Assembly (NCBI RefSeq): GCF_021869535.1
Contig: NW_026262701.1
Coordinates: forward strand, 4,464,001-4,528,000
DNA: 64,000 nucleotides
Source: Mytilus californianus
Lineage: Eukaryota
Direction of reading: 5' to 3'
Below, piece by piece: positions 19,651 to 46,110 of the stretch. The notes below the pieces were generated by a model. It saw only the letters and a program-made list of their open reading frames with translations. It ran no database searches and had not been told where the DNA came from. A program made the position numbers and the translations under genes. Each line of letters opens with the position of its first letter. Within the stretch, counting starts at the first letter, position 1.

Positions 19651-20825
19651 AAATAAGGTAATGGACTGCAATTTTTTTGTATCAGAATATTACCATGTTT
19701 CATGATATAATGACTAATTAACAAAATAATACGCAAGAGAACAATCTATGATAATTAAATGCAACACATTGTCATTTCTCTGTTTGATTGCCAGATTGTT
19801 TGTTAGATGGAGGATATCTCTTTTAAAACATGCATATGTAAAAAACAAAAAGAATAACCAGATAGAAAACTATCCACCGTAGTAGTCAGCTATTAAAGGC
19901 TTCAACATAAAAAAAGAATTTTAAACGAAAAAAAAAAAACAACAGTCTGCTTTATTATTACACCAAAAAAGAGAAACCAATATTACAGACAGCAACCAAC
20001 GATGATAAATGAATAACAAGTTGCTAACTTGGGACAGGCAAATCAAATGTAAAATGTTTTTATGTTTGAGACCGCTGACAATGGTGTAACAGCACAACGT
20101 AATAACACATTTCTTAAATTAGTCTCAGTACGTAAGATATAACTCATTATTTAGCTCAAAACGTTTTGGTATCCTTTTGTAATTGATCATCTCCTGTCAT
20201 CCTTTTTATTGGGTTTTTTTTTCTTTTCGTTTTCATTTTTTTTTTTTTTAATAAATCATTAATGAAGTGGATTCAACGTTAATCAAATGTTTTCGCAGTA
20301 ACTGAAATTTAACTTTTAAAACATGTTTTGGTTAAATCTTGTTAAAATGATTCATTCCCATTACCTTTTGGTGACCATTTACGTATTACGTAAATAATTC
20401 GATGTAACATCTGTTGAAAATGTTATTTTTAAATTAGATGACTAATAATACGCTCCAAGGAAAAAAAACTAACTTTATCAAACAGTTAACAAAAAGGGAA
20501 ATTAATAAACATTTTCCATTCAAAGCTATACACTGATTTCCGAGATTTTAAGACTCAATCGATTAAATGAAAGAAGGGTAACTTGAAAGTGAAAGTGGAT
20601 CGATCAACCTTGCTGAAACGTATTCGAGATAGTTTTAACCAATCGTTGTATCTTATTAACGGTAAAATGAATTTATAACTAATCTTTTTATCGTATTTGT
20701 GGTGAAATTAACTTATAAGGATTCGGTGTATCGTAGTTATGGTGAAGGGAACCAATAACGAATCGGTGTATCGAAACTGTGGTGTAAGGAGCTGCTCACA
20801 AACAGGTGTATAGAATCTGTTGTAT

Positions 20826-21281
20826 TGTGACGGGATTGCTTCCCTTCATTAGTAGATACTTAGTCAGCCGTAAGCGGTTGAGCTAAGGAAGTACTTCTTT
20901 AGCTCAGTCGGTATACGCGCTGCCTTGTAACACAGAGGTCCCGGGTTCGAGTCCCGGTGGAGACATACGATTTTGCAAGTAGAATCATGCTCTCCGGTTA
21001 CATTGGCGCCCAACAATAAAAACCCATGGTAGTTAGAGAGGATTTCTAGTTAGGGTATGTGTGTGAGAGTCATAATGGTATGATGACTCTTGAGGTGGGA
21101 GAAGTGTGACGGGATTGCTTCCCTTCATTAGTAGATACTTAGTCAGCCGTAAGCGGTTGAGCTAAGGAAGTACTTCTTTAGCTCAGTCGGTATACGCGCT
21201 GCCTTGTAACACAGAGGTCCCGGGTTCGAGTCCCGGTGGAGACATACGATTTTGCAAGTAGAATCATGCTCTCCGGTTACA
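20826..21281 (+). mobile_element. Intact 456-bp TRIM with a tRNA-like sequence in both LTRs (Helenus-type)
   Basis: LTR1 20826-21002 and LTR2 21105-21281 are 177 bp, appear identical and run TGTGAC...GTTACA. PBS TGGCGCCCAAC at 21004-21014, PPT GAGGTGGGAGAAG at 21092-21104, and 4-bp TSD GTAT at 20822-20825 and 21282-21285. Confidence 0.95.
20893..20965 (+). promoter_or_regulatory. tRNA(Thr-UGU)-like Pol III internal promoter in LTR1 (second copy 21172-21244)
   Basis: A box TAGCTCAGTCGG, loop CTTGTAA and a perfect T-arm CCGGG-TTCGAGT-CCCGG (B box). The acceptor and D stems pair poorly. Confidence 0.8.
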
Positions 21282-22129
21282 GTATAATGAAATGCTAGTA
21301 ATAACGATTCGGTGTATCGCATCTGTGGTTTTGCATAAACTACCTGTATCCAATAATTTCATATCTCATTCTTGAAGAATAGTAAAAAGTACCATTTAAA
21401 CTAATAAAAATGACTGTTGCTTTCAATTAGTATTCATTTTGTACAAACCACAAAATCCGGATTGTCCATACTAATCTCCATGCAATGCCATATATTAATT
21501 CAAATATTACAGCTAGTTACAAAGTCAAAATACTTTCTTCAGATGATGAAGGCAAAGATATTGGACACTTCGGACATTAAATATGTAAAAACCACAGCTG
21601 TAAAGTTGCATTCATCTATTAAAAAAGTGACCTATGTCACTTGTGAGGAGTCATTTCCACAAATAGTCCTTTCGAACAGAAAATGGAAAATTAAATATAT
21701 TTAATATAATAAAAGATAGAAACTATAAAATGAAGCACTATTGAAATGTTGATGCATGAACTGGCAAGAAGGTGAACACTACTAAATTTACACAGGCGAA
21801 TATGAATTCCATCTAAATTTAGCCTCAAAAGGGCTTCTTGTTTCCTTAGATAGACACCTTGAACATTGAAAATGCTTCTTATTCCCACATATAAACTTAC
21901 TTCATAAATAGTACAAACTAAACCAGATAGTTATTGATTGATTGTGTCTTGGGAAATCCTAAGTGATACATTAAGGGTAGTTCACACTTGATTCAATGAA
22001 TGCGAAAGGTTAAAACAAATACAAATGAACTTTGGTTCTCGTACTAGGAACAACAAAATTATTTATTTTGTAAAAATTATTTCCGTACTCTATGTATACC
22101 TTTTCTGAATATGTTATAGATATTTAAAA

Positions 22130-41600: not shown

Positions 41601-43289
41601 AAGGTTGTGGTCATAGGTATATCTGTACATACTTTCTTTGATTCATTATGACTGGATTGACGACAGCATTCCGGTCCTTATAGACATGCCAGGCTAATGA
41701 TCAATCTATATTTATCTACGTGTATGTAGCCTTAGATGATCTTTTTTTTTTTTGTTGTTTTAATTATGTTGTTGGATGGCTTATAGATGTTTATCTTCCG
41801 TAGACGATTACAAGTTTTCATATTTGTACTCTGTTAACTTTAAACTAAATTATGCAATTTAGATCCATGCTGGTTAAAACCGTTTCCCCGTAGCATATTT
41901 TTAAAAAGAAAACATTTAAACAAAGTCCTAACAAAACAGAAAATATATTTTACTTTCTTTGTTCAATCAGTTGTGAAAATTATGTTTCTTTAAATGTGCA
42001 AAAGGTAAACATGGTTCGACACACTTAATGAACAGAATTTATGGTTATTAGTCTGCACCAAATAACACTGATATATTTGTGGTTAATTATGTAACAAATG
42101 ATGTTCTAGAATGACTTCGTGTTTTCAAATATGCCTGCATCTTGGTGGTGGTTGTAGTGGTGGTGGTGGTGGTGGGGATTGATATGTCGTTAAAAAACTA
42201 TGATGATTATCGAATCTTTGTGACTGTGACTATTCAATATAAACACAGAAACAACTGTTGTGCGCATGCAAATCATATCTTGTTTTATTATTATTTAAGC
42301 CTAATGCCAGAAATAAACAATGTTCTGTGATGATTTTAATTCATGCATTGATACGGCATATAAATTCATGATGCAAAATCTGTCCACGCACTTAACAGAC
42401 CAGATTACTAAGACGGTGTTTTTGAAAGTTCTTTCTTTTTCATGATTTGCCTTAACTTTAAATACGATTTTCAGTTTATAAATTATGTAATTATAATAAG
42501 GCCAATGTTGCAACTTCTTTTGAGAAAGTTTCCCTTACAAAATTTAGGCTGCTCTGTTTAAGCTTTTGGGGTTAAATGGTTTTTATGAGTGGTTCAGTGA
42601 TTTATTCATTTGGCTTTCAACATCTTTTTTTTAAGGTGCCATTTGATAGTTTACCAGAAACAAATGTCTTGCTCAATGAAAAAGAAAGCTTACGTTTATG
42701 TAATTTTTGATTTATTTTTAAACAGTGACTGTTTCTGTTTCACAATTTAAAATAAAACATAACAACACAACATAAGAACAAAGTTCTTTAACTTGTTTCA
42801 GTTCGTTAGACAGCACTCTTTATATAGCTTAAAACTCTTCGGTATCATTTTGTAATTTGCCATCCCCCGCCACCCTTTTTATTGTTTTTTCTTCTTTCTA
42901 AACAATTAATTATGTGGATTCAACGTAAATTTACCTTTTAAAACATGTTTAATTTAACTCTTGTTGAAATGATTCATTCACGTAATCTGTTGGTGACCGT
43001 TATCTTGATAATTCGATGCAACATCTGTTGTAAAATGTTTTAAATTAGATGACTAATCAAACGCTCCAAGGACAAAATAAACTTTATCAAACAGTTTACC
43101 AAAAGGGGAATTCAATAACATTTTCAAATAAAAGCTATAGACTGATAGATTTCTGAGATTTTAAGACTCAAACAATTGAATGAAAGAAGGATAAAACGGA
43201 AGTGGAAGTGGATCGATCGACTTTGCTGAAACATATACAAGTTAGTTTTAAGAAATCGATGTATCGTATCAACAATGAAATAAACTAAT

Positions 43290-46110
43290 AATGAATCGGT
43301 GTCTCCAAACTGTGCTGTAATGAACTAGTAACTAATCGGCGTATCGCATTTGTGTTATAGTGAACTAAAAGCAAATCGGTGTATCGCATCTGTGGTATAT
43401 TGAACTGTTACAAATCGGTGTATCGTATCTGTGGTGTAATGAACAAATAACGAATCAGTGTATGGTATATGTGGTGTAATGAACTGTTACAAATCGGTGT
43501 ATCGTATCGATGGTGTAATGAGCTGTTACAAATCGGTGTATCGTATATGTGGTGTAATGAACTAATAACAAATCGGTGTATCGCATATGTGGTGTAATGA
43601 ACTGATAACTAATCGGTATATCGAATCTGTGGTTAAATGAACTGTTACAAATCGGTGTATCGTATCTGTGGTGTAACGAACCAATAACAAGTCGATGTAT
43701 CGCATGTGTGGTGTAATGAATTGATAACAAACCAGAGTTTCGAAACTGTAGTGTAATGAGCTTATAACGAATCGGTGTATCTTATCTATGGTGTAATGAA
43801 CTGTGCCAAATCGGTGTATCGTATCTGTGGTGTAATATACTTATAACGAATCGGTGTCTCGTATCTGTGGTGTAATGTACTCATAACAAATCGGTGTATC
43901 GTACGAGTGATGTAATGAACCAATAACGAATCGGTGTCTCGTATCTGTTGCGTAATGAACTAATAACAAATCAGTAAATCGTATCTGTGGCGTAATGAAC
44001 TGTTACAAATCGGTGTATCGTATCTGTTGCGTAATGAACTAATAACAAATCAGTAAATCGTATCTGTGGTGTAATGAACAAATTAAAAATCGATGTGTAA
44101 CTTACTGATAACAAATTGTTGTATAGTATCTGTGGTGTAATGAACTGTTACAAATCAGTGTAACGCATCTGTTGTGTAAGTTACTGATAACAAATTTTTG
44201 TATAGTATCTGTGGTGTAATGAACTGTTACAAGTCAGTGTATCGCATCTGTGGTGTAAGTTACTGATTACAAATTGTTTTTTAGTATCAGTGGTGTAATG
44301 AACTGTTACAAATCAGTGTATCGCATCTGTTGTGTAAGTTACTGATTACAAATTGTTGTATAGTATCTATGGTGTAATGAACTGTGCCAAATCGGTGTAT
44401 CGTATCTATGGTGTAATATACTTATAACGAATCGGTGTCTCGTATCTGTGGTGTAATGTACTCATAACAAATCGGTGTATCGTACGAGTGATGTAATGAA
44501 CCAATAACGAATCGGTGTCTCGTATCTGTGGTGTAATGAACTCATAACAAATCAGTGTATCGCATCTGTTGTGTAAGTTACTGATTACAAATTGTTGTAT
44601 AGTATCTGTGATGTAATGAACTGTTACAAATCAGTGCATCAAATCTGTTGTGTAACTTACTGATAACAAATTGTTGTAAAGTATATGTGGTGTAATGAAC
44701 TGTTACAAATTAGTGTATCTCATCTGTTGTGTTACTTACTGATAACAAATTGTTGTATAGTATCTGTGGTGTAATGAACTGTTACAAATCAGTAAATCGT
44801 ATCTGTGGTGTAATGAACAAATAACAAATCGATGTGTAACTTACTGATAACAAATTGTTGTTAAGTATCTGTGGTGTAATGAACTGTTACAAATCAGTGT
44901 ATCGCTACTGTTGTGTAACTTACTGATAACAAATTGTTGTTTAGTATCTGTTGTATAATAAGCTGAAAATAAATCATTCTGTCGTATAATTGTTGGAGAT
45001 AATACCATAGATGATAAAAGAACTCGTAGGTTCCTTACGAGTGTAGGTTCGGATATATGTTTCTTCCTCAAATACAATTGTTAACCATTCTTCAATTAAC
45101 ATTCAAACAAATAGTTCATTACACCACAATTGTGATTCCGCTCAATTCACCACAGTTTCGATACAGTTGAGATCTGACACCTTTTTCTATGATCAATACA
45201 ATAGGTAATTATTGAAACTGAAATTAATTTTGATTAAAAAAGGTGGTCAGTATTTATACGGTCATTTGCAAAGTCCCGGTTCTTCCAAACAACTTTGATT
45301 CAAATGCCTTACACACATGGGGGTCTCTTCCTATATAAATTGTTGTATAGTATCTGTGGTGTAATGAACTGTTACAAATAAGTGTATCGCATCTGTTGTG
45401 TAACTTACTGATAACAAATTGTTGTTTAGTATCTGTGGTGTAATAAACTGTTACAAATCAGTGTATCTCATCTGTTGTGTAAGTTACTGATAACAAAGTG
45501 TTGTATAGTATCTGTGTGTAATGGGCTATTACAAATTAGTGTATCGCATCTGTTGTGTAACTTACTGATAACAAATTGTTGTATAGTATCTGTGGTGTAA
45601 TGAACTGTTACAAATCAGTAAATCGTATCTGTGGTGTAATGAACAAATAACAAATCGATGTGTAACTTACTGATAACAAATTGTTGTTTAGTATTGTGGT
45701 GTAATGAACTGTTACAAATCAATGTATCGCATCTGTTGTGTAAGTTACTGATAACAAATTGTTGTTTAGTATCTGTGGTGTAATAAACTGTTACAAAGTA
45801 GTGTATCGCATCTGTTGTGTAAGTTACTGATAACAAATTGTTGTATAGTATCTGTGGTGTTATGAACTATTACAAATTAGTGCATCGCATCTAAAGTGTA
45901 ACTTACTGATAACAAATTGTTGTATAGTATCTGTGGTGTAATGAACTGTTACAAATCAGTAACTCGTATCTGTGGTGTAATGAACAAATAACAAATCGAT
46001 GTGTAACTTACTGATAAAAAATTGTTGTTTAGTATTGTGGTGTAATGAATTGTTACAAATCAATGTATCGCATCTATTGTGTAACTTACTGATAACAAAT
46101 GGTTGTTTAG
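43290..46110 (+). repeat. ~39-41 bp minisatellite (two blocks: 43290-44950 and 45340-46110) with alternating dimeric variants
   Basis: Core AAATCGGTGTATCGTATCTGTGGTGTAATGAACTGTTAC. Later units alternate with ...CATCTGTTGTGTAAGTTACTGATAACAAATTGTTG... Confidence 0.92.

What the first reader, a model, noticed from the sequence alone, without database searches (positions are those of the whole stretch)
20826..21281. Intact, very young TRIM whose LTRs each contain a tRNA-derived Pol III promoter
All hallmarks are visible: identical-looking 177-bp LTRs, an 11-nt PBS matching the tRNA-Lys(CUU)-type TGGCGCCCAAC, a PPT, a 102-bp non-coding interior and a 4-bp TSD. The tRNA-like module makes it a tRNA analogue of the 5S-bearing Cassandra TRIMs. 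This matches the Helenus group as I recall it (animal members with 4-bp TSDs), so the class is known, but this family may be undescribed. LTR identity implies recent activity.
Basis: partly seen in the sequence, partly recalled or inferred. Interest (0 to 1): 0.72.

Follow-up and report, generated by a model that had tools for sequence, protein, structure and literature searches.

The report
Intact copy of mussel Helenus-1 TRIM
This is a complete, recently inserted 456-bp copy of Helenus-1, a miniature jumping gene of mussels whose terminal repeats carry a tRNA-like promoter module; the reading is right, but the class and this family were published in 2024, so it is ordinary.

Summary
There are two 100% identical 177-bp LTRs with TG..CA ends, a 102-bp non-coding interior, and a PBS complementary to the 3' end of the host's own tRNA-Lys(CTT). 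There is also a G-rich PPT and a 4-bp TSD (GTAT).

It is a dispersed family. The genome holds 348 LTR cores. Of 26 independent full copies, 22 have their own perfect 4-bp TSD. Thirteen uninterrupted paralogous minisatellite units in the same window serve as empty sites.

The tRNA-like module keeps boxes A and B, but ARAGORN and Rfam do not call it a tRNA in any copy.

The element belongs to Helenus (Kojima 2024). By eye it is about 92% identical to the published Helenus-1_MyCo of a congener. The family is therefore not undescribed, and this scan had already met it on other pieces of this genome.

Additions here:
- A single TTTT lies just 3' of the module, with no other T4 run on that strand.
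- A hairpin conserved across mytilid families pairs upstream sequence with the module's 5' end.
- Two Gypsy families share the LTR termini, spacer and PBS, and are candidate partners.

Pol III transcription and trans-mobilisation remain inferred.

The parts
20822..20825 (+). 5' target-site duplication GTAT
   Evidence: The same 4 nt stand at 21282-21285. Paralogous uninterrupted units carry the target only once.
20826..21002 (+). 5' LTR, 177 bp, TGTGAC...GTTACA
   Evidence: 100% identical to 21105-21281. About 93% identical by eye to the published Helenus-1_MyCo LTR.
20879..20906 (+). 28-nt palindrome forming a 14-bp hairpin. An upstream arm pairs with the 5' acceptor strand and the start of box A of the tRNA-like module.
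   Evidence: I2; it dominates the LTR fold; z = -3.9. Related mytilid Helenus families keep it, with G.U pairs possible only on the + strand (read by eye).
20893..20965 (+). tRNA-like module (pseudo-tRNA with a TGT anticodon-like loop). Box A is 20900-20911 and box B is 20944-20954.
   Evidence: ARAGORN does not call it. Rfam matches the T arm only. The isolated fold is no better than shuffles (z = 0.69).
20971..20974 (+). TTTT run, the candidate Pol III terminator and R/U5 boundary
   Evidence: in nearly all copies it is the only run of 4 or more T on the + strand of each LTR.
21003..21104 (+). Internal domain, 102 bp, non-coding
   Evidence: About 91% identical by eye to the Helenus-1_MyCo internal domain, which is also 102 bp.
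21004..21014 (+). Primer-binding site TGGCGCCCAAC, one T after the LTR
   Evidence: It is complementary to the last 11 nt of mature host tRNA-Lys(CTT). The host genes end in ACGTTGGGCG, to which CCA is added.
21092..21104 (+). Polypurine tract GAGGTGGGAGAAG
   Evidence: It is conserved in all copies. The A at 21100 is shared with only two other loci.
21105..21281 (+). 3' LTR, 177 bp. tRNA-like module 21172-21244, box A 21179-21190, box B 21223-21233, TTTT 21250-21253.
21282..21285 (+). 3' target-site duplication GTAT
20634..20823 (.). Host 40-bp minisatellite into which the element inserted. It resumes at 21300-21329.
   Evidence: (D2, D3). The paralogous array at window 42954-45990 is uninterrupted.

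Best explanation
Window 20826-21281 is an intact, recently inserted copy of Helenus-1. [quoted passage not shown] The genome matches the Mytilus californianus reference.

Shown here: the element's architecture, its membership in a dispersed family with 4-bp TSDs, its insertion into a minisatellite unit, the complementarity of its PBS to host tRNA-Lys(CTT), and the fact that the module is not a recognisable tRNA.

Inferred mechanism, in four steps:
1. RNA polymerase III starts a few nucleotides upstream of the module in the 5' LTR, using boxes A and B.
2. It leaks through the weak TTTT of that LTR and stops at the TTTT of the 3' LTR. The resulting RNA has the layout R-U5-PBS-interior-PPT-U3-R, with R of about 80 nt.
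3. The RNA is packaged in trans by a Ty3/Gypsy element that uses the same tRNA-Lys primer and similar LTR termini.
4. It is reverse-transcribed from tRNA-Lys and integrated with a 4-bp staggered cut.

My odds: identity as Helenus-1 about 0.97; Gypsy-type trans-mobilisation about 0.8; Pol III as the source of the transposition template about 0.55.
For: Architecture and identical LTRs.

Family: at least 44 scored matches among 751 candidates, and 348 LTR cores within 3 mismatches of a 35-nt probe, with 0 in the control.

TSDs: 22 of 26 independent full copies have perfect, mutually different 4-bp TSDs. LTR-pair differences range from 0 to 33.

Empty sites: 13 paralogous minisatellite units in the same window run uninterrupted through the insertion point.

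Primer: 43 host tRNA-Lys(CTT) 3' halves end in ACGTTGGGCG.

Not a tRNA: ARAGORN finds none in the window or in 44 loci holding about 90 LTRs. Rfam matches only the T arm.

Literature: Helenus is defined as a TRIM with a tRNA-like LTR, with 4-bp TSDs in animals; bivalve families use tRNA-Lys, and Gypsy partners are proposed. The published Helenus-1_MyCo and MyGa sequences match by eye.

Pol III compatibility: box A fits TRGCY..YGG and box B holds GGTTC. The boxes lie 32 nt apart. The only T4 run on the + strand sits 6 nt after the module, in nearly all copies.

Partner candidates: two families with PR-RT-RNaseH-IN order share the 17-nt junction TTACA-T-TGGCGCCCAAC, an LTR start TGTGA and a G-rich PPT.
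Against: The TTTT inside the 5' LTR would stop much Pol III transcription after about 80 nt, before the PBS. The absence of other T4 runs is only weakly unexpected (about 2 expected by composition).

Similarity to the Gypsy candidates is limited to 17 nt plus 5-nt termini. Their TSD length could not be read. Only 20 of 42 further PBS-junction sites could be fetched.

No identical source copy is present; the nearest copy is 99% identical.

Identity to the published consensus was judged by eye from the supplement text, not computed.
Confidence: 0.9

Rival explanations
1. The element is the same Helenus-1 TRIM, but the retrotransposition template is made by RNA polymerase II or by read-through from flanking genes. 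On this reading the tRNA-like module produces only a short Pol III RNA of about 80 nt that ends at the adjacent TTTT, or it serves another role such as RNA structure, packaging or a chromatin boundary.
For: A TTTT lies 6 nt after the module inside the 5' LTR, upstream of the PBS, in nearly all copies. The hairpin at 20879-20906 includes sequence upstream of the expected Pol III start, and related families conserve it in a way that points to RNA pairing. That implies the upstream arm is transcribed at least from the 3' LTR. The 2024 paper states that Pol III function is unvalidated.
Against: Boxes A and B are the best-conserved LTR parts across divergent Helenus families, while the anticodon arm is free to vary. 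The element's short length and T4-free + strand suit Pol III. Cassandra, the 5S analogue, is reported to be transcribed from its Pol III promoter (citing Kalendar 2008).
Confidence: 0.35
2. It is an internally deleted derivative of an autonomous LTR retrotransposon that carries the same LTRs, rather than a member of a dedicated non-autonomous lineage.
For: TRIMs in general can arise this way. Two interior variants (102 bp and about 120 bp) share one LTR type in this genome.
Against: In 50 loci, no Helenus LTR was followed by a long coding interior. The Gypsy elements with the same PBS have unrelated LTRs of about 621 bp or more. The short architecture is conserved across mytilid genera.
Confidence: 0.03
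3. It is a local tandem duplication of a tRNA gene or pseudogene region, not a mobile element.
For: There are two identical copies of a tRNA-like sequence 279 bp apart.
Against: ARAGORN and Rfam find no tRNA. PBS, PPT, TG..CA ends and a TSD are all present. Dozens of dispersed copies have their own TSDs. Empty paralogous sites exist.
Confidence: 0.01

Closest known systems
Helenus-1_MyCo (Mytilus coruscus) and Helenus-1 / 1B_MyGa (M. galloprovincialis), Kojima 2024, PMC10886601
   Same: The LTR ends are the same (TGTGACGGG...CTCTCCGGTTACA). The tRNA-like module is nearly identical and has the same upstream palindrome. The spacer T, PBS and PPT are the same. The interior is 102 bp, as in MyCo, and the TSD is 4 bp. 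By eye, identity is about 93% in the LTR and about 91% in the interior.
   Different: The LTR is 177 bp instead of 182-183 bp, because of a 5-nt gap near position 22. Three bases differ in the D-arm region and a few in the U5-like tail. The host species (M. californianus-like genome) is not in the paper's species list. This genome also carries the MyGa-type interior of about 120 bp on the same LTRs.
Cassandra (plant TRIM with 5S rRNA-derived LTR module; Kalendar 2008, as summarised in PMC10886601)
   Same: It is a TRIM with a Pol III-type small-RNA gene module in both LTRs, so the two are analogous in logic (together called TRIMp3).
   Different: The module here derives from a tRNA, not 5S; Rfam finds no 5S match. 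The host is an animal, the TSD is 4 bp, and the likely partner is Gypsy. Transcription has been shown for Cassandra but not for Helenus.
biv-TRIM (Satovic et al. 2019, PMC6934838)
   Same: It is a bivalve TRIM that occurs as full elements, solo repeats and tandem LTR-interior arrays. Tandem forms were also seen here (L002, L036).
   Different: biv-TRIM lacks a canonical PBS and has a conserved TGATCCCAAAGGAC interior motif. The present element has a canonical tRNA-Lys PBS and lacks that motif.
tRNA-derived SINEs (SINE2)
   Same: They carry an internal box A / box B Pol III promoter taken from a tRNA, are short and non-coding, and are mobilised in trans.
   Different: SINEs use LINE machinery and have no LTRs, PBS or PPT. 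This element has the full LTR-retrotransposon cis set.

Membership tests
Helenus (TRIM with tRNA-derived LTR sequence; Kojima 2024) | TRIM architecture: two LTRs, total length under 1000 bp, no coding capacity | tested here: met
   The element is 177 + 102 + 177 = 456 bp, the LTRs are 100% identical, and the longest ORF is 31 aa.
Helenus (TRIM with tRNA-derived LTR sequence; Kojima 2024) | PBS next to the 5' LTR and PPT next to the 3' LTR | tested here: met
   The PBS at 21004-21014 is complementary to the host tRNA-Lys(CTT) 3' end. The PPT is at 21092-21104. Both are conserved in 29 copies.
Helenus (TRIM with tRNA-derived LTR sequence; Kojima 2024) | tRNA-like sequence in the LTR with box A TRGCY..YGG and box B GGTTC | tested here: met
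   TAGCT..CGG stands at 20900-20911 and GGTTC at 20944-20948. The criterion is quoted.
Helenus (TRIM with tRNA-derived LTR sequence; Kojima 2024) | Animal members make 4-bp TSDs | tested here: met
   The TSD here is GTAT. Of 26 independent copies, 22 have perfect, distinct 4-bp TSDs.
Helenus-1 lineage of Mytilus (Helenus-1_MyCo / MyGa) | At least 80% identity over at least 80% of the published consensus | tested here: met
   The comparison was made by eye against the supplement text and gave about 92% with matching domain lengths.
TRIMp3 (TRIMs transcribed by RNA polymerase III) | Transcription of the element from the small-RNA-derived promoter | not testable with these tools
Only sequence-level compatibility is available.
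Gypsy-dependent non-autonomous element | An autonomous Gypsy in the same genome shares the PBS, PPT type and LTR termini | tested here: inconclusive
   Two Gypsy families share TTACA-T-TGGCGCCCAAC, an LTR start TGTGA and a G-rich PPT. There is no further similarity, and their TSDs could not be read.
Functional tRNA gene | A cloverleaf recognised by tRNA finders | tested here: not met
   ARAGORN finds no genes in the window or in 44 loci. Rfam matches the T arm only. The fold is no better than shuffles.
Cassandra | 5S rRNA-derived sequence in the LTR | tested here: not met
   Rfam gives no 5S match at E <= 1 in 20500-21600.
biv-TRIM (Satovic 2019) | No canonical PBS; conserved TGATCCCAAAGGAC in the interior | tested here: not met
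   A canonical PBS is present, and the motif is absent from 21003-21104.

The most novel reading that the evidence does not exclude
Mytilid Helenus families may carry a conserved RNA switch at the U3/R junction. A 13-14-bp hairpin pairs an upstream arm with the 5' acceptor strand and the start of box A of the tRNA-like module. Helenus-1, -2 and -3 of Mytilus, Modiolus and Limnoperna keep it through A-to-G changes that give G.U pairs on the + strand only. In RNA started at the module in the 5' LTR, the upstream arm would be missing. In the 3' LTR copy the hairpin would form and hide the tRNA-like 5' end, for instance from RNase P, or it could serve as a palindromic dimerisation or packaging signal. 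Together with the single TTTT that would set the R/U5 border, this would give a concrete, testable transcript model for a Pol III-driven LTR element in animals.
Probability: 0.25. Interest if true: 0.5.

Novelty: already known. Interest (0 to 1): 0.2.

Why it matters
The element matters little as a discovery. The class (Helenus, TRIMp3) and this mussel family were published in 2024, and this scan has met the family on other pieces of the same genome.

Its use is practical. It is an undamaged copy with identical LTRs in a chromosome-level genome, and it comes with a family age series. It also comes with candidate Gypsy partners and a clear prediction for transcript ends. That makes it a convenient substrate for the experiment the 2024 paper says is missing: showing whether an animal LTR element really is transcribed by RNA polymerase III.

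Tried and rejected
Neither RNA expression nor insertion polymorphism could be tested.
As a result, 22 of 42 extra PBS-junction sites were never inspected, and the 5' flanks and TSDs of the Gypsy candidates could not be read. I did not try to obtain those letters by other means.
I replaced it with a plain 35-mer.
- Conservation within the family shows no extra constraint on boxes A and B, the TTTT or the hairpin. The copies are too similar and decay neutrally, so this test is uninformative.
- I considered that the window-type subfamily is a recombinant of two LTR types. I dropped the idea because only one diagnostic LTR site separates the groups.
- I first placed the Gypsy LTR start 8 nt too far upstream, through a miscount. 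Pattern counts corrected it to TGTGATAGCC, which is present in both LTRs.
- The published consensus sequences were compared by eye only.
- I built no consensus of the element or of the Gypsy families.

Full report
**Observation.**
The window holds two 177-bp direct repeats, at 20826-21002 and 21105-21281, that are 100% identical. They begin TGTGAC and end GTTACA.

Between them lie 102 bp (21003-21104). This interior opens with one T followed by TGGCGCCCAAC, and closes with the purine tract GAGGTGGGAGAAG. The tetranucleotide GTAT flanks the element on both sides, at 20822-20825 and 21282-21285. The longest ATG-initiated ORF in the 456 bp is 31 aa.

Each repeat carries a 73-nt tRNA-like stretch; in the 5' LTR it is 20893-20965. 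Box A, TAGCTCAGTCGG, is at 20900-20911. Box B, GGTTCGAGTCC, is at 20944-20954.

**It is a mobile-element insertion, not a local duplication.**
- The whole-genome search returned 44 scored matches out of 751 first-look candidates. Most are full length, at 87-100% identity.
- A 35-nt probe from the module finds 348 sites with up to 3 mismatches, against 0 for the reversed control.
- I examined 29 two-LTR copies. Two of them duplicate another locus and one is a tandem form, which leaves 26 independent copies.
- Of those 26, 22 have perfect 4-bp TSDs that differ from copy to copy, and one has 3 of 4 bases matching.
- LTR-pair differences run from 0 (this copy and L003) through 1, 2, 4, 5 and upward to 33. 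The family has therefore been active over a long period, up to recently.
- The element sits in a degenerate 40-bp minisatellite.
- A paralogous array lies in the same window, at about 42954-45990. It contains 13 units that read straight through the insertion point with the target present once. These units serve as empty sites.

**The primer.**
The host genome has 43 tRNA-Lys(CTT)-type 3' halves in a 1,135-bp tandem array. All end in ACGTTGGGCG. With CCA added, the last 11 nt are exactly complementary to the PBS.

**The tRNA-like module is not a tRNA.**
ARAGORN calls nothing in the window, nor in 44 loci holding about 90 LTRs of the family. Rfam at E <= 1 matches only the T arm. The isolated module folds no better than shuffled sequence (z = 0.69). 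Its anticodon-like loop reads CTTGTAA, which is Thr-like, but the stems around it are degenerate.

**What is known.**
Kojima 2024 (PMC10886601) defined Helenus as TRIMs with a tRNA-derived sequence in the LTRs. In that paper:
- animal members make 4-bp TSDs;
- 51 families come from pteriomorph bivalves, Mytilida included;
- bivalve families use tRNA-Lys among other primers;
- some modules look Thr-like;
- Gypsy partners are proposed;
- Pol III function is explicitly unvalidated.

The paper's supplement gives Helenus-1_MyCo (LTR 182 bp, interior 102 bp) and Helenus-1 / 1B_MyGa. Read against the window by eye, the LTR differs from MyCo at about 11 positions plus one 5-nt gap. The interior differs at about 7 positions plus two single-base gaps. 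That is about 92% identity overall, which makes them the same family by the usual 80% rule.

The genome's size (1.65 Gb) and largest scaffold (142.4 Mb) match the Mytilus californianus reference (contig length). That species is not in the paper's list. Earlier notes of this scan reached the same family assignment on other pieces of this genome.

biv-TRIM (Satovic 2019) is a different element. It has no canonical PBS and carries a different interior motif.

1. In nearly every copy, the only run of four or more T on the + strand is a TTTT lying 6 nt after the module in each LTR (20971-20974 and 21250-21253).
   - If Pol III starts at the module in the 5' LTR, it must leak through that TTTT and stop at the 3' one.
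   - That would define R (about 80 nt), U5 (28 nt) and U3 (about 67 nt).
   - About two further T4 runs would be expected by composition, so their absence is compatible with the model but not decisive.
2. A 28-nt palindrome (20879-20906) forms a 14-bp hairpin that dominates the predicted LTR fold (z = -3.9). It pairs upstream sequence with the module's 5' acceptor strand and the start of box A.
   - By eye, the hairpin is kept in Helenus-1, -2 and -3 of Mytilus, Modiolus and Limnoperna, and partly in Bathymodiolus.
   - The upstream arm varies between A and G opposite T, so pairing survives as G.U on the + strand only. Near the loop there are two-sided changes.
   - The paper does not mention it.
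   - Its function is unknown. Copies within the family decay neutrally and say nothing on this point.
3. This genome carries the same LTR type around two interiors, one of 102 bp and one of about 120 bp (MyGa type). It also holds tandem LTR-interior-LTR-interior-LTR arrays (L002, L036).
4. The junction ACA-T-TGGCGCCCAAC has 62 exact sites, against 0 in the control. I could fetch 20 of the sites that had not already been seen. Six of these belong to other elements.
   - Four copies of one family, and one of a second, have long frames with protease, RT, RNase H and integrase in Gypsy order, plus a PNMA-type gag.
   - Both families end their LTR in TTTTACA, start it with TGTGATAG, and have a G-rich PPT.
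   - Beyond the shared 17 nt, they show no similarity to Helenus.
   - They are candidates for the partner, no more.

**How young is this copy?**
Zero differences in 177 bp is the youngest class in the sample. This copy has one private base in the interior (21050). It shares a PPT variant (21100) with only two other loci. The nearest other copy is 99% identical, so no identical source is in the assembly. I did not convert divergence into years, because I have no tool-derived substitution rate for mussels.

**Limits.**
- Published consensus sequences were compared by eye only.
- I built no consensus of the TRIM or of the Gypsy elements, and I single out no copy as functional.

**Verdict.**
The element is a member of an already published family, so interest is low. 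The hairpin and the terminator layout are small leads for testing the Pol III model.

Noticed in passing
G000:C110:103753502-103812050 (outside the window): There is a tandem array of 43 tRNA-Lys(CTT)-type gene 3' halves at a 1,135-bp period, all on one strand and all but one identical over 42 nt.
   Followed up: partly
window 42954-45990: This is a paralogous copy of the upstream flank (77% identity over about 490 bp), followed by a long array of the same 40-bp minisatellite that hosts the Helenus insertion.
   Followed up: partly
L038, L039, L032, L044 (contigs C1 and C46) and L047 (C88): Two Ty3/Gypsy families have a tRNA-Lys PBS and TGTGA...TTACA LTR termini. The first family has about 80 LTR matches in the genome, with LTRs of about 621 bp or longer variants. 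I describe them only and built no consensus.
   Followed up: partly
L034:560-640: Two Helenus LTR ends face each other head to head across a full 18-nt tRNA-Lys PBS, forming a palindromic junction next to an inverted LTR. It is a rearranged copy of unclear origin.
   Followed up: no
L045 and L050, about 540-860: These two loci have the same flanks. In each, a MyGa-type interior and a shortened 3' LTR (B-box region deleted) follow a different upstream sequence that contains an inverted PBS-like motif.
   Followed up: no
L046:440-740: This is a copy of a different Helenus-like family: the LTR ends in CTCTACTGTTAC, the 3' LTR starts TGTAGCGAG, and the tRNA-Lys PBS is the same. More than one Helenus family therefore coexists in this genome.
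   Followed up: no
L016, L018, L019 (contigs C140 and C90): Three Helenus copies share identical flanks and TSD. They are segmental duplicates or unplaced haplotype contigs rather than independent insertions.
   Followed up: no
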